Positions 35,193 to 41,474 of a DNA stretch of 64,000 bases are shown piece after piece. The position numbers and the translations under genes were made by a program. Under the pieces are notes generated by a model. That model saw only the letters and a program-made list of their open reading frames with translations. It did no database searches and was not told the DNA's origin. The stretch's first letter is position 1. Each line of letters opens with the position of its first letter. Location of the stretch: IMG/VR virus record IMGVR_UViG_3300037294_000266, positions 1 to 64,000 of that record; one strand, 5' to 3'.

Positions 35193-35495
35193 TTAGCATT
35201 TGGCAGCGGCCATGGCATAGAACTCATGGTTGATCTTTATCAACTGATCCAACGTCATGGCGGTATGGAGTTCGTCCATGAACACACCAGTGATGGCTTG
35301 ACAAGTGACCATGAGATGTTTAGCTGATTCGAACTCTTCGCCCTGCAACGTCCCCTTAGGTGCTCGCAGTATCAACTGTAAGAACGTATTGAGATGACTG
35401 GCGGTAATCCGTGCTGCCAGCCAACGTTGCGGGTTGTCATTGTATCCAGGAGGGACAGGGGTTCCTATGGATGTCGTTACACTGACCATGCTCAT
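35193..35495 (-). CDS. hypothetical protein
   Basis: 100 aa in operon. Confidence 0.6.
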   Translation of the reverse strand: MSMVSVTTSIGTPVPPGYNDNPQRWLAARITASHLNTFLQLILRAPKGTLQGEEFESAKHLMVTCQAITGVFMDELHTAMTLDQLIKINHEFYAMAAAKC

Positions 35496-36119: not shown

Positions 36120-36159
36120 TAGATAAAGTTTAAATCTATAGGATAGGTACTACAAAAAT

Positions 36160-36960
36160 AAAAGAAAAAAGGCTTTGGGGTAACTCTTTGGCTAGCGAGC
36201 CCAGGGATGATCAATCCCCAGTCGTTAGCAATCTAAGAGTTCCCCGTGACCCTACAACATGACACTGACCTAAGACGGCCTTGGATTAAAATCCAATAAG
36301 TTCGAACTTAATCGATTTGAGTTTGGTTCGGTCTGTTTATACCGAGACTAGTCTTAGCTAACGAGTACCTTAAACACGCGCTTTGAGTCCTCTCGGTTGC
36401 TGAGGCTGCAATACTGAAACCCAGTGTGGCACACAATCCAATCAGACGATCGCCGTTCGAAGTTCCCACCTGCTCGTTCTTTTACAAACGAGTGCGAACG
36501 AATGATCCATTTCCACAGATCATCTTCCGAGTATGGGTTATCTTGAGGGGCTTCGGCTGATGAAGTTTTCCAGTACTGGACTGGTTCTTCGATGGCGCAT
36601 GCGACACTACAGTTCAGTAAGGCAGCGAGAGCAATTGCTCCGATGCTGATCGTTAACGCTCCATGGTCCGGGTTGGGATTGATCTTCTCGTCAGTATACT
36701 GGTAATACAGCTCACGGGAGCCACCCTTACGACCGCCTTATGATCGTGGGTGGCGGCGATGCCTGTTAGTGCGCTGATGGAGATGCCTGTAGATCGTAGA
36801 GGGGTCAGCTTAGCCAGAGGCCCCAGCCTCAAACTGCCAATCGAACGCACCAGCGATACAACTCGCCAGATTGTACGTGACCAAAATAGACTTCCAAGTA
36901 ACCCACCTGAGAGGAATCCGAACATTGCTGTCCTTATGATTCAGTTATCGGGAGTTTCAC
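36160..36960 (-). ncRNA. candidate ~800-nt multi-domain structured non-coding RNA
   Basis: Largest gene-free gap; more than 12 stems including a long-range 13-bp helix; GNRA loops on minus strand; TATG at 36960-36963; terminal stem plus U-tract. Confidence 0.65.
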
Positions 36961-36996
36961 ATAGATCATGTAACTATCGTAAATAAATACGGATGG

Positions 36997-37521
36997 TTAG
37001 GATAGCTGGGTTACTTCTGGGAACAAGACATTGAGCTTAGCGACGATGAAGTCAATCTTCATGGTCGTAAAGCCAGAACCGTTGGATACCCCCTGCTCAT
37101 TGAACTGTTTAAAGGTATCGTCATCAGAGAGACCTGCCGCGAGTATTGCCGCGATTAAGTCTCGATTGTACTCGCTATCGCTCATTGCCCAACTCACACC
37201 CAAGCCCTGAGGCAATGAATGGACATCGACTGTGTATGATTTATCATCGTCAATGTATATATCCGCTTGCCACAGCGCACCGTGTCTGTCGATGATCAGA
37301 GATGCTGATGTCGTTGATGTTTTGTACCACGTGTCGAATAGTACTCTACCTTCCAGAACTGAAGGCAGATCTGGACCGAGTCCGGTTAACGGATAGATAA
37401 ACCCATGGCGCGTGAAGAACTGATTTTCAGAAGATCCAGCTACCTTTATAGATAGACCTTCCCGAATTGGAGGAATGTTACTAAAACCGATTTTACCATC
37501 CCGGTAGAACAGCGTCATCAT
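36997..37521 (-). CDS. degenerate Ntn-hydrolase/proteasome-beta-like paralog
   Basis: MTLFYRDGKI N-terminus and AILAAGLSDDDTF helix mirror the upstream gene. Confidence 0.45.
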   Translation of the reverse strand: MMTLFYRDGKIGFSNIPPIREGLSIKVAGSSENQFFTRHGFIYPLTGLGPDLPSVLEGRVLFDTWYKTSTTSASLIIDRHGALWQADIYIDDDKSYTVDVHSLPQGLGVSWAMSDSEYNRDLIAAILAAGLSDDDTFKQFNEQGVSNGSGFTTMKIDFIVAKLNVLFPEVTQLS

Positions 37522-38045
37522 TCACCTCCCTTAATAACAAACTGTTTAAGTCGTGTAGTATCGATCGTGTCGAACGTCGAACCAGAGAGGTAATCTAGAG
37601 TGGGCAAGCGTTTGAAGGCTTCGTTAGGAGTCAGACCACAGCGCAATAGAGAAGCAAGCATGGGCCCGCCGGTACCACAGGCATGAGTCTTACCGTCCAG
37701 ACGTACGACGAAAACAATCCCAGTGTCTTTTAAGGCATACTGAACATTCTTTGTACAGATTATTGCGTTGGTGAAATCAATGTCATTCCCGTGGCTGAGG
37801 TTGAGATCAGTTAATTTGATACAGTCTCGACCATTCAGATACATGGCTGTTATAAGTGCTCGAAACAAGGACTCGTACTTGTCGCGATTAAGTTCGGTAA
37901 CTGATTTACCCGAAACCGCATATGCGAAAGATTTGTCTTTACTGATAAGGACCTTCTCCCCATCAATGAAAGTAACGGGAGTAGTGAAAGAAACTTGCTT
38001 CCGATCGCCGTATATTTTACCCTGGTGAAATACGATAGCTGTCAT
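37518..38045 (-). CDS. HslV/proteasome-beta-like Ntn hydrolase
   Basis: MTAIVFHQGKIYGDRK (Thr2, D-R), K near position 30, ACGTGG, GLTPNEA...D.LSG. Confidence 0.6.
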   Translation of the reverse strand: MTAIVFHQGKIYGDRKQVSFTTPVTFIDGEKVLISKDKSFAYAVSGKSVTELNRDKYESLFRALITAMYLNGRDCIKLTDLNLSHGNDIDFTNAIICTKNVQYALKDTGIVFVVRLDGKTHACGTGGPMLASLLRCGLTPNEAFKRLPTLDYLSGSTFDTIDTTRLKQFVIKGGE

Positions 38046-38087
38046 AAAAGATCCGTCATAAAGGGGAGGCTGTGCCTCCCCTAGTGA

Positions 38088-38408
38088 TTAACAGTTAAAA
38101 CCCTTCAAGAAGGCCGCATCGTCTTTATTGCAACCACGAGAACTCGGACTCTGCGCAACTGCTGCTGTTGGCAATGGAGCGCCGCCTTCAACTGGTTCGA
38201 TGGACAGATCATCCATGATCAGTTCGAACGAACTGCCGGCCTTGAGACCTTTCTTCGTATCGACCTCGACCGCTAACTGGATCTTGTCATCGATCTTGAA
38301 CTGAAGAGTATTGGAGTTATGCGTAACGACCACACAAATTATCTTGTCTTTGCCGCCAGCGATATGTTTCAACATCGAAGTCAGTGAATCATTACTATTA
38401 ATCTTCAT
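38088..38408 (-). CDS. hypothetical protein
   Basis: 106 aa, GAGGA RBS. Confidence 0.6.
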   Translation of the reverse strand: MKINSNDSLTSMLKHIAGGKDKIICVVVTHNSNTLQFKIDDKIQLAVEVDTKKGLKAGSSFELIMDDLSIEPVEGGAPLPTAAVAQSPSSRGCNKDDAAFLKGFNC

Positions 38409-38483
38409 GCGGTATTTCCTCAGGATGGATCAATTAGACATAGAGGAGGGTTCGAACCCTCCTCTATGTTTGACGTGGATCAA

Positions 38484-39554
38484 TTAGCCTTGAACTTCTT
38501 CGCCATGTACGCCAGGGCTGAATGCAGCTTCTGCTTCCAGCTCTTGCAGATGAGGAATGAGGATCTTCGACCAGGCTTCGAAAAGCTCGGTATCAGCTTC
38601 CAACTGCTCACGGTTGTACCAACCCACTGTACGGTACTTGGTTTCACGAACAACGAAGTCGTATTCGGCCGGGATCTGAATAACACCCACGACAGCGATG
38701 TGAGTATTGCCAACGAAGCCTTTGACTTCTGGCTTGTAGTCAGACAAGAACGCGACCGGCAGGAGAGAGGCGTCGATCCTGCCTGCATTGCGAGTAGTGG
38801 GTTCTTTACCGAAGACGTCAGTGTAGACCGTGTTGATAGGGGTTGGTGTAGTGAATACCAACAGACCCTTTTCAGTATCTTCGGCCATTGGAATGATGAT
38901 GTACTCATCTTTAACCAACAGAGGTTCGCCAACAACTTCTGTCAGGTATTCAGACAACGGACCAGTAGCAGCAATGGCTTGGATGCCGGTCAGTTTGAAA
39001 TGAGTCAGAAGCTCGTTACTCATTTCCTGGGCATCGAGAGGACGCGGACTGTACTCCGGCAGCAACAACTGGATTTCTTCACCCAGTTCACGCACACCCG
39101 AACGCATGGTGGAGAAGTACGAAGACGGACATTCAGCATGATAGTCCACTTCGTTACCGTCTGCATCATAGACACCGTGACCTGTTACATCGCTCACGTC
39201 AACATGGCCACCAAAGCCAAAGCTGTAGTTGTCTTTCAACTTGTCTTCGCTACCGGCAGAGCGCTGGTATACGGCAAACAGAGTTTCGGTGCCGATCTTC
39301 TTGGTGACGACCATATATAGGATCAACTGGCGTACGGATTCGGTCTGGTCGATGGTGGAACGACGCATGCCAACGAACCCAGCATCCATTTCCATCATCT
39401 TGTTGCGGATCTCGTTCTCAGGATAGAACTTGGCCGAGCCGGACATATCCGGCACCAGGTCCTTCAGAACGAATTCTGGCAGATAACCGAAGGTGGTCTC
39501 ATCGCGCTTGGTACGGACGAATGGATTGAGTTTGACGATGTTTTGCTGGTCCAT
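38484..39554 (-). CDS. Nudix-like phosphoesterase (COG4112 type)
   Basis: RQLILY, YQR..GSE.KL..NYSFGFGGHVD, RELGEE, VGNTHIAVV, FEAWSKI. Confidence 0.75.
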   Translation of the reverse strand: MDQQNIVKLNPFVRTKRDETTFGYLPEFVLKDLVPDMSGSAKFYPENEIRNKMMEMDAGFVGMRRSTIDQTESVRQLILYMVVTKKIGTETLFAVYQRSAGSEDKLKDNYSFGFGGHVDVSDVTGHGVYDADGNEVDYHAECPSSYFSTMRSGVRELGEEIQLLLPEYSPRPLDAQEMSNELLTHFKLTGIQAIAATGPLSEYLTEVVGEPLLVKDEYIIIPMAEDTEKGLLVFTTPTPINTVYTDVFGKEPTTRNAGRIDASLLPVAFLSDYKPEVKGFVGNTHIAVVGVIQIPAEYDFVVRETKYRTVGWYNREQLEADTELFEAWSKILIPHLQELEAEAAFSPGVHGEEVQG

Positions 39555-39611: not shown

Positions 39612-41474
39612 TTAGATGCTGACGGGAACGCCAGCGGTGGATGGTGCAGCAACATTAACTTCAGGAGCTTTAATGCTGCGGTCAGTGATCACCGGATACT
39701 TGTCGAAATCAGGCGCCACTGTCCAACCATTGGCATCAAAGCGATAACGCATGTCACGTGAACCGAAACGCGCCTGTCCTTCGTCATTCATGCGGACGTA
39801 AATGATGACGGCTATTGTGCGATCCTGACGTGGATGGCGAGGCCCGAAGACCATGGAAATACTCTGCTGTGTTTCAGCACGCGGAATCTCGGTCACACGG
39901 GAATAATCTTCCAGTGCACGACGGTGATCGCGGAACTCTGGCTTCATCGATTCTGCAAACAACGCAGGACGAGGAGCCATTGGCATTGAAATACCACCGA
40001 ACTGGAAGAAGATCATGTCTTCGTCATTCCGGGCACAGTAACCAATGGCCTTGTTCGTACTGATCGACAACACCGGCAACACTGCTTCACGATCTTTCAA
40101 AACGTGAGGCTGTGGGCGCAGTTGGTGCAGCTGATAGCCTTCGCTATATTTCCATGGAATGAACGGCGCACGATTCTCCTCAGTGTCCCAGCTGAAGATT
40201 GGTTTGGCTTCGCGGTTTGCCATGCCATTGATCAGAATCGGCATGAACGTAATGCCAGTGGCCACAAAGCCAATCTCGTCAGCAAACGGCAGTATTTCGT
40301 TTATGAAATAGCCGAGGTCTACTGGCACGATCGCCGAAGGAGTGGTCAGTGTAATGCCTTTCTTTTCAGCGAACGCTGCGAAACCATTGTCAGTTGGCTT
40401 ATGAGCCTCTTCGAATGTCCACGCGCGCTTGGCTTCCCAGATAACCGGGATATCGATCTCAGCAGCTTCTGTCTGCTCCAGAGAGGCCATCCAGTCACCT
40501 TCTTCAAGGAACCGCGCAGTCTTGGCCACTTGACTTTCAGTAGCTTCGGCAGTGGTACGGAGGTAGTTCAAACCACTGGTCTTTTCTGCCCAGAACTTAG
40601 CCAGACGATCCACTTGGTTTTCAGACGAACCGGCATTGAGGATTTCTTGAGCACGAATGAGCAATTCGCCGAGCATTGAGCTACGCAGACCAAGTAGCCC
40701 CATCGAACGCATGCCGGCCTTCCAGATCGAATTGACCACCATGGTTTCTTGGCTGTACGGGTTGACCGAGGTGCTGTATTCTGGCAGTGTTTTCAGGACG
40801 TTGATATTCAAGAGCAGTTGCATGAACTGTTCCATCATAAACTTACCAGAAGCAACATACTCGATGACCCGTGATTTAAACAGGTTATCAACGAAGACCA
40901 CTGTGTTTAAATCAACCTCGCCAATGATCCGGATGAGTGTGTTCACCCGATCCATCTGCGCGCTGATACGCCCGGTGTCAATCGCCGTGCCCAGTACCGG
41001 AACACGGTGACTCAGCACTACTTGCTCGATGTAGAAGTGTCGGAATGGCTTGCCGCCGAGATTGGTGTTCTCGATGTAGTGTTGATACGGACCATCGGTA
41101 TTGAAGAGATTGGTGATTCGGCTTTCTTCAACAAACCGCTTCATTCCTTCGACCACTGTTTTCATTACCGGGTCGGTAACGACTTCAGGGTTCCAATAGA
41201 TGCTCTTGACACCGGAGTCAGTACCCATGACAAGATGGCCTACACGTGCCATGAACTTGGAGCAGGTTGTGCACGTGTATTCTTGGACGTATGCAGCTAC
41301 GTCGAGAACATCGTGCTGAAAGGCGGCAATGCGCAGCATCTTCAGGTAGTGTTGGTTCAGTTTCTTACGAGACTGGGTTACGAACAGCACGCCAACGCCT
41401 GGGCGCAGGAGTTCAGTAGCCGCAGTGCGAAGTTGATCCAGGGTGACGTGATATGTATCGTCAACAGTCGACAT
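39612..41474 (-). CDS. large hypothetical protein with CxxC motif
   Basis: 620 aa; QEYTCTTCSKFMARVGHLV...SIYW; HFY; NYLRTTA. Confidence 0.75.
   Translation of the reverse strand: MSTVDDTYHVTLDQLRTAATELLRPGVGVLFVTQSRKKLNQHYLKMLRIAAFQHDVLDVAAYVQEYTCTTCSKFMARVGHLVMGTDSGVKSIYWNPEVVTDPVMKTVVEGMKRFVEESRITNLFNTDGPYQHYIENTNLGGKPFRHFYIEQVVLSHRVPVLGTAIDTGRISAQMDRVNTLIRIIGEVDLNTVVFVDNLFKSRVIEYVASGKFMMEQFMQLLLNINVLKTLPEYSTSVNPYSQETMVVNSIWKAGMRSMGLLGLRSSMLGELLIRAQEILNAGSSENQVDRLAKFWAEKTSGLNYLRTTAEATESQVAKTARFLEEGDWMASLEQTEAAEIDIPVIWEAKRAWTFEEAHKPTDNGFAAFAEKKGITLTTPSAIVPVDLGYFINEILPFADEIGFVATGITFMPILINGMANREAKPIFSWDTEENRAPFIPWKYSEGYQLHQLRPQPHVLKDREAVLPVLSISTNKAIGYCARNDEDMIFFQFGGISMPMAPRPALFAESMKPEFRDHRRALEDYSRVTEIPRAETQQSISMVFGPRHPRQDRTIAVIIYVRMNDEGQARFGSRDMRYRFDANGWTVAPDFDKYPVITDRSIKAPEVNVAAPSTAGVPVSI

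What the first reader, a model, noticed from the sequence alone, without database searches (positions are those of the whole stretch)
36997..38045. Tandem HslV/proteasome-beta-like paralogs directly upstream of the 800-nt RNA
Seen: the 38045 gene has a Thr at the N-terminus after Met removal, GDRK, ACGTGG and the C-terminal helix-D-x-x-SG pattern of Ntn peptidases. The overlapping 37521 gene mirrors the N-terminal strand and C-terminal helix but lacks DR and GTG. Known: proteasomes pair active and inactive Ntn paralogs. Inference: a heteromeric phage mini-proteasome or isopeptidase (possibly against ubiquitin-like defences). No hairpin separates the pair from the RNA region, so co-transcription or an RNP is conceivable.
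Basis: inference. Interest (0 to 1): 0.6.

Follow-up and report, generated by a model that had tools for sequence, protein, structure and literature searches.

The report
Paired proteasome-like genes in jumbo phage
Two overlapping genes of a 267-kb phage encode an HslV/proteasome-type protease subunit with an intact active site and a catalytically dead protein of the same fold. The pair is conserved in related giant phages with a small partner gene and usually a dedicated AAA ATPase, which points to a virus-encoded mini-proteasome, while the proposed tie to a neighbouring "RNA" is not supported.

Summary
Both genes are real. A (38045-37518, minus strand, 175 aa) overlaps B (37521-36997, 174 aa) by ATGA, and a strong ribosome-binding site for B lies inside the end of A.

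A belongs to the phage HslV family: phrog_1040 matches all 18 relatives, best E 9.7e-15. Thr2, Asp14, Lys31 and G-T-G 124-126 are invariant.

B has no family annotation. With 29 relatives it folds confidently (pLDDT 91.5), and nearly all of its structural matches are Ntn/proteasome-fold proteins (Z up to 6.5). It has no conserved N-terminal nucleophile, Asp, Lys or GTG, so it is a dead subunit.

In every locus examined, a ~105-aa gene, a GC-rich hairpin, A and B lie in that order. A classic-clade AAA ATPase (p97/Cdc48-like, not HslU-like) sits within two genes in most relatives. It is absent from this phage's whole genome.

A-B binding gets only weak modelling support (ipSAE 0.40 against controls of 0.00).

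The 877-nt stretch downstream is ORF-poor, much less conserved than the genes, matches no Rfam family, folds only marginally better than shuffles, and is missing from the more distant genomes that keep the pair. The RNP and isopeptidase ideas have no support.

Verdict: a new two-subunit variant of phage proteasome homologues.

The parts
38088..38408 (-). p105: a 106-aa protein of unknown fold that lies immediately upstream of A in every related locus. It has an N-terminal domain of about 75 aa, a Pro/Ala-rich linker, and a conserved S-x-x-G-(C/A/S) motif 12-16 residues before the C-terminus.
   Evidence: ORF. Orthologues sit in the same position in DT01, L003, L004, L015, L017, L018, L102 and L103. 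dN/dS is 0.19 against L004. No Pfam, PHROG or PDB sequence match.
38063..38081 (-). GC-rich stem-loop (8-bp stem, ACA loop) between the p105 stop and the A start, followed by TTT. It looks like a terminator or attenuator.
   Evidence: Sequence. RNAfold gives -18.7 kcal/mol, and an equivalent hairpin (-14 to -29 kcal/mol) with a different stem sequence is present in the same spacer in 9 of 9 loci. The simple terminator scan did not call it because its T-run is short.
37518..38045 (-). Gene A: a 175-aa HslV/proteasome-beta-like Ntn threonine peptidase subunit, predicted to be active.
   Evidence: phrog_1040 'peptidase HslV family' at E 1.8e-8, matched by all 18 family members (best E 9.7e-15). 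Invariant T2, D14, K31, G124-T125-G126 and D151. These map colinearly onto HslV T1, D17, K33 and GSGG. The ESM Atlas model (pTM 0.83) has viral proteasome-family clusters as its neighbours. The DT01 orthologue is annotated 'putative protease HslV'. dN/dS is 0.12.
37525..37530 (-). Shine-Dalgarno sequence GGGAGG for B, lying inside the last codons of A. The ATGA stop/start overlap is at 37521-37518.
   Evidence: an AAGGAG-type SD and an overlapping stop/start are seen in 7 of the 8 junctions shown.
36997..37521 (-). Gene B: a 174-aa catalytically dead Ntn/proteasome-fold protein, proposed to be the non-catalytic partner subunit.
   Evidence: AF2 with 29 relatives gives pLDDT 91.5 and pTM 0.87. 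All of Foldseek's top 50 PDB matches are proteasome subunits or BPH, at weak E values of 0.02-0.08. VIA Z reaches 6.1-6.5, nearly all leading matches are Ntn-fold proteins, and model residues 1-2 align with mature residue 1. The Atlas shape search gives TM 0.60/0.69 to the viral '20S proteasome' cluster. No residue is invariant in the family and there is no conserved N-terminal Thr/Ser/Cys. dN/dS is 0.11.
36120..36996 (-). It has no conserved ORF and only patchy conservation. Its function is unresolved.
36281..36315 (-). Two adjacent small hairpins inside the ORF-poor stretch. The first holds a 12-mer (CGATTAAGTTCG) that is invariant in four phages and has one compensatory pair. The second keeps its stem with different sequences in each phage.

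Best explanation
A and B are the catalytic and non-catalytic subunits of a phage-encoded, self-compartmentalising proteasome-like peptidase.

A loses its initiator Met, because Thr at position 2 permits excision. That exposes Thr1 as the nucleophile, with Asp14 and Lys31 standing in for Asp17 and Lys33, and the G-T-G loop standing in for Gly-Ser-Gly. B has the same alpha-beta-beta-alpha sandwich but none of these residues. It is made in a fixed ratio to A by translational coupling. It would assemble with A either as separate alpha-like rings or interleaved in mixed rings, forming or gating the chamber.

The ~105-aa protein encoded just upstream is separated from A by a conserved attenuator-like hairpin and is a third component: an adaptor, an assembly factor or a gate. 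In most relatives a dedicated classic-clade AAA ATPase supplies unfolded substrates. This phage has lost that gene, so its particle must work without ATP or borrow a host unfoldase. The likely purpose is degradation of selected host or early phage proteins during infection.

Shown here: the folds, the catalytic residues, the conserved gene linkage and purifying selection. Inferred: the assembly, the stoichiometry, the substrates, and the roles of p105 and the AAA ATPase.
For: - A is HslV family: with the catalytic residues invariant and mapping colinearly to HslV.
- B has the Ntn/proteasome fold at high model confidence and has no conserved catalytic residue.
- The same viral proteasome-like Atlas clusters are neighbours of both A and B.
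- B's model also matches a 176-aa BFVD entry that is probably the DT01 orthologue of A, at E 4e-3.
- A and B are adjacent with overlapping stop and start in all loci, down to 22-32% identity.
- Divergence of A and B tracks across genome pairs: 50/51, 49/52, 43/32 and 32/22%.
- dN/dS is 0.12 for A and 0.11 for B, so the dead subunit is as constrained as the active one.
- Complex prediction gives ipSAE 0.40 (runs 0.44, 0.34, 0.40) against a best control of 0.00. The runs agree in at least 97% of contacts and the partner pLDDT is at least 77. The mark was reached by 58 of 80 solved complexes and 2 of 110 mismatches, but the tool rates scores at or below 0.60 as weak.
- An orthologous AAA ATPase (phrog_2376) sits within 0-2 genes of the pair in DT01, L003, the P0003 contig, L015, L017, L018 and L103, on either side of it. 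Its best PDB matches are p97/VCP, NVL, Cdc48, NSF and VAT.
Against: - No experiment bears on this.
- The complex prediction is only 'weak support'.
- A-B sequence similarity is not significant.
- B's structural Z-scores of 6.1-6.5 are below the level of about 8 that the tool regards as safe. The fold call therefore rests on how uniform the hit list is and on full-length coverage.
- My own single-sequence AF2 model of A failed (pLDDT 38.6), so A's fold rests on the PHROG profile and on the Atlas's own model.
- HslV, BPH and the described phage homologues are homo-oligomers.
- The window's phage lacks the AAA ATPase, as does L102 within 5 kb. The AAA is therefore not obligatory, and its adjacency could reflect another function.
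- A second HslV-like gene elsewhere in the genome could be A's real partner, or be redundant with it.
Confidence: 0.55

Rival explanations
1. A acts alone as an HslV-like homo-oligomeric peptidase. B is an Ntn-fold pseudoenzyme with a separate job that is merely co-expressed. It could be a decoy or inhibitor of the host HslV/HslU or of another host protease, or a substrate adaptor.
For: HslV, BPH and Anbu are homo-oligomers (PMC8665760). The complex score is weak. B is far more divergent than A and has no invariant residue. A and B show no significant sequence similarity.
Against: The stop/start overlap, strict adjacency and matched divergence hold across all loci. dN/dS is equal for the two genes. 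The controls scored 0.00.
Confidence: 0.22
2. The pair is part of an RNP with, or is functionally tied to, a long structured RNA transcribed from 36120-36996.
For: No terminator lies between B and the stretch. The stretch has no ORF conserved as a protein. It holds a few conserved blocks and two small conserved hairpins. It lies downstream of B in four related phages.
Against: nhmmer gives only 15-25 bits for the stretch against 109-277 bits for the neighbouring conserved genes A, B and the 356-aa gene. There is no Rfam family even at E 1. The folding z-score is -1.98 on the gene strand and -1.82 on the other strand, so it is not strand-specific. The consensus fold of the best-conserved part is only -6.8 kcal/mol. 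L003 and L015 have genes inserted between B and the stretch. L017, L018, L102 and L103 keep p105-A-B without it. No Ntn peptidase is known to need an RNA (general knowledge).
Confidence: 0.04
3. A/B is an isopeptidase or deconjugase that strips ubiquitin-like or other protein tags made by host defence systems.
For: Only context: phages counter such systems. p105 carries a conserved small-residue motif (S-x-x-G-C) ahead of a variable tail, which loosely recalls precursor tails of ubiquitin-like proteins.
Against: Proteasome-family Thr peptidases cleave unfolded polypeptides inside a chamber, while known deconjugases belong to other folds (general knowledge). p105 matches no ubiquitin-like family. 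A dedicated unfoldase-type AAA in relatives fits bulk unfolding and degradation better.
Confidence: 0.04
4. A/B is a virion maturation (prohead) protease system.
For: [quoted passage not shown]
Against: The neighbours are non-structural: a homologue of a gene annotated as Nudix hydrolase in DT01, DUF8224 and an AAA ATPase. Known prohead proteases have other folds (general knowledge). PHROGs files phrog_1040 under 'other', not under head.
Confidence: 0.05

Closest known systems
HslV (ClpQ), the peptidase of the bacterial HslUV protease
   Same: Size of about 175 aa. No propeptide beyond Met1. Thr1 nucleophile. Asp, Lys and G-(S/T)-G-G motifs at colinear positions. The phage family profile is named after it, and the DT01 orthologue is annotated cd01913 HslV.
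   Different: Pfam PF00227, NCBIfam and PDB sequence searches do not reach it. The direct profile comparison gives only E 0.018. HslV is a homo-dodecamer with HslU (HCLR clade) as its partner. Here there is a dead second subunit, and the associated ATPase of relatives is classic-clade. The first strand hairpin is 4 residues shorter, and Thr replaces Ser in the GSG loop.
20S proteasome alpha/beta system, including the actinobacterial arc-pup-prcB-prcA arrangement
   Same: An active beta-type gene is immediately followed by an inactive gene of the same fold. A small protein gene sits just upstream. An AAA ATPase of the classic clade (the clade of PAN, Mpa, Cdc48 and VAT) lies nearby in relatives. 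B's best solved-structure matches are proteasome subunits.
   Different: B has no alpha-type N-terminal helix extension: its model starts directly with the first strand. p105 shows no similarity to Pup, and no Dop/PafA-type gene was noticed in the flanks I looked at. Ring symmetry is unknown. The resemblance in gene order comes from my knowledge of the actinobacterial operon, not from a test made here.
Phage proteasome homologues PPH, AAH and CPH (Fuchs, Alva and Lupas 2021, PMC8665760)
   Same: Proteasome-like Ntn proteins encoded by tailed phages. The Atlas neighbours of both A and B include a ~145-aa viral '20S proteasome family' cluster whose size fits PPH.
   Different: That survey reports single genes, no informative genomic context and no co-occurring AAA+ partner. 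Here a catalytic and a dead member are translationally coupled, with p105 and usually an AAA ATPase. I could not place A or B in that paper's clusters because its sequences are not at hand.
Connectase, TANGO2, BPH and Anbu (other Ntn/proteasome-like proteins)
   Same: They appear among B's structural matches at Z 4.7-6.4.
   Different: Connectase and BPH keep an N-terminal nucleophile, and B's family does not. There is no sequence relation.

Membership tests
HslV / proteasome-beta Ntn threonine peptidases (for A) | N-terminal Thr nucleophile exposed after removal of Met or a propeptide | tested here: met
   M1-T2 is invariant in 18 of 18 family members, and also in L102 and L103. That Met is removed before Thr is general knowledge and was not tested.
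HslV / proteasome-beta Ntn threonine peptidases (for A) | Asp17, Lys33 and the Gly-Ser-Gly loop at colinear positions | tested here: met
   D14, K31 and G124-T125-G126 are invariant. In the hhalign alignment to an enterobacterial HslV alignment they fall on D17, K33 and GSGG. L102 has GSGG. That alignment is not significant on its own (E 0.018).
HslV / proteasome-beta Ntn threonine peptidases (for A) | Significant match to a family model | tested here: inconclusive
   phrog_1040 'peptidase HslV family' is matched by 18 of 18 members, E down to 9.7e-15. Pfam PF00227, NCBIfam and PDB sequence profiles give no match.
HslV / proteasome-beta Ntn threonine peptidases (for A) | Ntn alpha-beta-beta-alpha fold | tested here: inconclusive
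   The Atlas's own model (pTM 0.83) has TM 0.63-0.76 to viral proteasome-family clusters.
HslUV system | HslU (HCLR-clade AAA+) partner | tested here: not met
   This genome has no phage AAA of the relatives' type at all. The relatives' ATPase matches p97, Cdc48 and NSF, not HslU or ClpX. Use of the host HslU was not testable.
Ntn / proteasome fold (for B) | Four-layer alpha-beta-beta-alpha sandwich starting with the N-terminal strand | tested here: met
   Model pLDDT is 91.5. Nearly all leading PDB matches are Ntn proteins covering model residues 1-164, at Z 4.5-6.5 and rmsd about 4.2 A over 125-141 residues. The Atlas gives TM 0.60/0.69. The Z-scores are middling, so this is a confident fold call and not proof of homology.
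Active Ntn hydrolases (for B) | Conserved N-terminal Thr, Ser or Cys nucleophile and catalytic Asp/Lys | tested here: not met
   The 29-member alignment has no invariant column. Residues after Met vary (T, S, P, A, N, G and others), and the columns facing A's D14, K31 and GTG are variable.
20S proteasome (alpha + beta architecture) | Two subunit types, one dead, assembling into stacked rings | not testable with these tools
   Two subunit types are present. Assembly has only the weak pairwise prediction.
20S proteasome (alpha + beta architecture) | Alpha-type N-terminal helix H0 that gates the pore | tested here: not met
   B's model begins with strand residues 3-7 and has no N-terminal helix.
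Structured non-coding RNA (for 36120-36996) | Match to a known family, or conserved structure with covariation, or evidence of expression | tested here: inconclusive
   No Rfam match. Folding z-scores are -1.98 and -1.82. Two small hairpins show a few compensatory changes among four sequences. No RNA run holds the locus.

The most novel reading that the evidence does not exclude
DT01-like and other uncultured jumbo phages carry a complete virus-encoded proteasome system. It would consist of a catalytic beta-like subunit (A), a dead alpha-like subunit (B), a dedicated Cdc48/VAT-type unfoldase, and a ~105-aa factor whose conserved near-C-terminal motif marks it as a gate, adaptor or cleavable tag. 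This would be an independent viral counterpart of the PAN/Mpa-20S machines and the first AAA-linked member among the 'new' proteasome homologues. The window's phage, which has lost the unfoldase but keeps p105-A-B under purifying selection, would be a natural experiment on ATP-independent function.
Probability: 0.3. Interest if true: 0.8.

Novelty: new variant of a known kind. Interest (0 to 1): 0.6.

Why it matters
Proteasome homologues in phages are known only as orphan single genes of unknown role. The 2021 survey of the superfamily stated that no genomic context and no AAA+ partner could be found for them.

A conserved cassette gives these proteins a testable architecture and suggests that giant phages bring their own regulated protein-degradation machine. 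The cassette comprises an active subunit, a dead subunit of the same fold, a small accessory protein set apart by an attenuator-like hairpin, and usually a classic-clade AAA ATPase.

The cassette also bears on how active/inactive subunit pairs, the alpha/beta principle of the 20S proteasome, can arise. The B family (about 30 representative clusters, all unannotated) would become a new branch of the Ntn/proteasome-like superfamily.

Tried and rejected
- **Near-identical DNA in the phage collection:** none found.
- **tblastn of A, B and two distant B relatives against isolate phages:** A and the two distant B relatives hit only Pseudomonas phage pPa_SNUABM_DT01; B itself hit nothing.
- **Pfam and NCBIfam for A, B and p105:** nothing.
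- **PDB sequence and profile searches for A, B and p105:** only chance hits.
- **Single-sequence AF2 of A:** unusable, pLDDT 38.6. This cost one of the two fold jobs, so A was never modelled with its alignment.
- **Atlas look-up for B:** the Atlas's own model is poor (pLDDT 0.38), so its neighbours are meaningless.
- **hhalign of A or B against a single E. coli HslV sequence:** nothing. The 74 distinct HslV sequences drawn from 80 fetched loci that were at least 85% identical gave a full-length but non-significant alignment.
- **Complex prediction A+B:** 'weak support' only, 0.40 against 0.00. I cite it as weak.
- **The relatives' AAA gene in this genome:** sought by translated search, tblastn, PF00004 and a family HMM, and absent. 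The only weak PF00004 hit lies in a 397-aa ORF that I read as NadR-like from its motifs.
- **The motif after B's stop (GTAAATAATTAC-like):** tested as a possible recurrent phage promoter. It occurs 25 times against 25.5 expected, so this idea is rejected.
- **The two small ORFs in the ORF-poor stretch:** tested as conserved proteins. Not conserved except where they overlap a conserved DNA block, and one indel shifts the frame between phages.
- **Sequencing runs:** only DNA runs from salt-lake and sediment metagenomes hold the locus, and no RNA run does.
- **Other notes:** one script call returned no answer. No alternative genetic code was used.
Full report
**Setting.** The window is the first 64 kb of a 266,646-bp IMG/VR virus record that CheckV rates as complete. 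The only DNA runs that hold the locus are salt-lake and sediment metagenomes. The nearest isolate is Pseudomonas phage pPa_SNUABM_DT01 (265.5 kb), at 32% identity for protein A. A DT01-like phage, JPTI55, infects P. fluorescens SBW25 (bioRxiv 10.1101/2024.08.29.610337).

- On the minus strand, A runs 38045-37518 (175 aa, P0001) and B runs 37521-36997 (174 aa, P0002). They overlap by ATGA, and GGGAGG lies just before B's start.
- No hairpin follows B.

**What A is.**
- Pfam, NCBIfam and PDB sequence searches are blank.
- A hits phrog_1040 'peptidase HslV family' at E 1.8e-8. All 18 relatives found with a profile word search hit the same family, best E 9.7e-15.
- In their alignment M1, T2, D14, K31, G124-T125-G126 and D151 are invariant.
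- A greedy profile alignment to enterobacterial HslV is colinear over the full length. It puts these residues on Thr1, Asp17, Lys33 and GSGG, though at E 0.018 it proves nothing alone.
- The ESM Atlas holds a model of A (pTM 0.83). Its neighbours are viral clusters named '20S proteasome family' or carrying PF00227.
- The DT01 orthologue is already annotated as a putative HslV protease.
- A is therefore a predicted active Ntn threonine peptidase, and this part is not new.

**What B is.**
- B had no annotation anywhere.
- The word search gave four relatives. I then spent the large profile search on B and found 29 representatives with E up to 0.001, of which 25 went into the alignment. With the window's B and three word-search relatives, that alignment holds 29 proteins of 157-227 aa.
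- With that alignment AF2 gives pLDDT 91.5 and pTM 0.87.
- Foldseek against the PDB gives only weak E-values (0.02-0.08), but all 50 top rows are proteasome alpha/beta subunits or BPH.
- The independent VIA search of 48,161 chains gives Z 6.1-4.5. The top 37 rows, and all but four of the 50 rows, are Ntn-fold proteins: proteasome, isopenicillin-N acyltransferase, TANGO2, acid ceramidase, connectase, BPH, Anbu, HslV and penicillin acylases. Model residues 1-2 are laid on mature residue 1.
- The second look gives Z up to 6.5 (rmsd 4.2 A, 136 residues aligned) and 285 chains at Z 5 or more.
- By shape, B's nearest Atlas clusters are the same viral proteasome-like clusters that neighbour A (TM 0.60/0.69).
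- In BFVD, B resembles uncharacterised proteins of DT01, Erwinia phages (PhiEaH1, Bosolaphorus, Derbicus, Huxley, RisingSun), Ralstonia phages RSF1 and RP12, Klebsiella phage Miami and Pseudomonas phage Noxifer.
- The B family has no invariant residue and no conserved N-terminal nucleophile.
- B is therefore an Ntn-fold pseudoenzyme.
- Whether it is a true paralogue of A cannot be shown by sequence: BLASTP E 0.002 over 33 residues, hhalign probability 0.7-2.5%. The two weak alignments are colinear, and fold, length and adjacency agree.

**Conserved context.**
- In DT01, L003 (259 kb), the 236-kb contig of P0003, L015 (247.5 kb compost contig), L017 (246.6 kb), L018/L019, L102 (65-kb contig with a TubZ gene) and L103, the order is always a ~105-aa gene, then A, then B. 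Homology was confirmed by BLAST and HMMs.
- A's stop overlaps B's start in all nine loci with both genes mapped, except L102, where a 2-nt gap separates them.
- The spacer between the 105-aa gene and A holds a GC-rich hairpin in 9 of 9 loci (-14 to -29 kcal/mol). The stem sequences differ and a T-rich run usually follows. I infer that this conserved attenuator or terminator sets the expression ratio between p105 and A/B.
- Against the closest relative (L004), dN/dS is 0.19 for p105, 0.12 for A and 0.11 for B, with dS near saturation.

**The AAA ATPase.**
- An orthologous AAA ATPase of 396-461 aa (phrog_2376, E 3.5e-47) lies upstream of p105 in DT01, L003, the P0003 contig, L015 and L103. It lies directly after B in L018/L019 and two small genes after B in L017.
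- Its profile matches classic-clade AAA domains: p97/VCP at 2.5e-7, then NVL, midasin, Cdc48, NSF, Rix7 and VAT. HslU and ClpX do not appear among the 60 rows shown.
- In the window the gene is cleanly absent. Only 75 nt separate the 356-aa gene from p105, and no copy exists anywhere in the genome.
- L102 also lacks it within 5 kb.
- p105-A-B is therefore the core, and the ATPase is a frequent but dispensable partner.

**Interaction.** Complex prediction with both alignments scored 0.40 (runs 0.44, 0.34, 0.40) against a best control of 0.00. The runs agree in at least 97% of contacts and the partner pLDDT is at least 77. The tool classes this as weak support: 58 of 80 solved complexes and 2 of 110 mismatches reached the mark, but passes at or below 0.60 are more often wrong than right unless the guess was already likely. 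Given the genetic coupling, I consider the prior high.

**The downstream 'RNA'.**
- The stretch 36120-36996 has no ORF conserved as a protein. The small ORFs at equivalent places in four phages share no significant similarity except over one conserved DNA block, and an indel changes the frame.
- nhmmer finds the stretch in L015, L003 and DT01 at 25, 21 and 15 bits. Genes A, B and the 356-aa gene give 109-277 bits. The stretch is not found in L017, L018, L102 or L103.
- In L003 and L015 other genes lie between B and the stretch.
- Rfam finds nothing. The folding z-score is -1.98 on the gene strand and -1.82 on the opposite strand.
- The best-conserved part yields only two small hairpins. One contains an invariant 12-mer.
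- No RNA run holds the locus.
- The stretch may hold a small RNA element or a regulatory site. An 800-nt structured RNA, co-transcription and an RNP are all unsupported.

**Literature.** Phage HslV genes have been noted in passing in pSal-SNUABM-04, which has two copies and no HslU (PMC7823757), and RAY gp116, a HslU-superfamily homologue assigned to the HslVU protease family. Fuchs, Alva and Lupas (PMC8665760) described the phage homologues PPH, AAH and CPH. They wrote that no genomic context and no co-occurring AAA+ interactor could be identified. Searches for paired or jumbo-phage proteasome-like systems found nothing further. The held library is not complete.

**Verdict.** This is a new variant of a known kind.

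Noticed in passing
window 38409-38483 (spacer between the 356-aa gene and p105): Relatives carry a ~400-aa classic-clade AAA ATPase gene (phrog_2376) here or just after B. In this phage it is cleanly missing and no copy exists elsewhere in the 266.6-kb genome.
   Followed up: yes
G000:C1:123559-124167 (-), outside the window (L101:3060-3668): A second HslV-like gene (202 aa). It starts M-T-T, has a T-G-T-G-S loop and a Cys-rich insertion, and hits phrog_1040 at E 2.1e-7. It sits next to a 147-aa gene that matches phrog_335 ('phosphatase') at E 3.6e-25 and looks macro-domain-like by eye.
   Followed up: partly
window 38063-38081 (-) and the same spacer in L001, L003, L004, L015, L017, L018, L102, L103: A GC-rich hairpin between p105 and A is conserved as a structure but not as a sequence in 9 of 9 loci. 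It is probably an attenuator that sets the p105 to A/B expression ratio.
   Followed up: partly
window 38088-38408 (-): p105 has a conserved S-x-x-G-(C/A/S) motif 12-16 residues before a variable C-terminal tail.
   Followed up: partly
window 36281-36315 (-): An invariant 12-mer (CGATTAAGTTCG) forms a small hairpin with one compensatory pair. A second hairpin follows whose stem is kept with different sequences in four phages. Its function is unknown.
   Followed up: partly
window 36357-36737 (-): A 127-codon stop-to-stop frame with a signal-peptide-like hydrophobic stretch but no ATG, GTG or TTG start before it. ORFs of about 100 aa at the same place in L003, L015 and DT01 are not similar as proteins.
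   Followed up: partly
window 38484-39554 (-) and 39612-41474 (-): The two genes upstream of the cassette are conserved with it. One is a 356-aa protein (phrog_8902) whose DT01 homologue is annotated as an uncharacterised Nudix hydrolase. The other is a 620-aa protein (phrog_1735) whose relatives carry PF26675 (DUF8224).
   Followed up: no
G000:C1:69209-70402 (-), outside the window (L006:1045-2238): A 397-aa ORF with an H-x-G-H-type nucleotidyltransferase motif and a P-loop, which looks NadR-like by eye. It is the only weak PF00004 hit in the genome.
   Followed up: no
L003:7015-7491: L003 has an extra 158-aa ORF with a P-loop-like N-terminus inserted between B and the ORF-poor stretch. L015 has a 129-aa gene at the same place.
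   Followed up: no
window 35193-35495 (-): A 100-aa gene that is well conserved at the DNA level in L003, L015, DT01 and even L018 (68-78 bits). Its order relative to its neighbours differs between the window and DT01.
   Followed up: no
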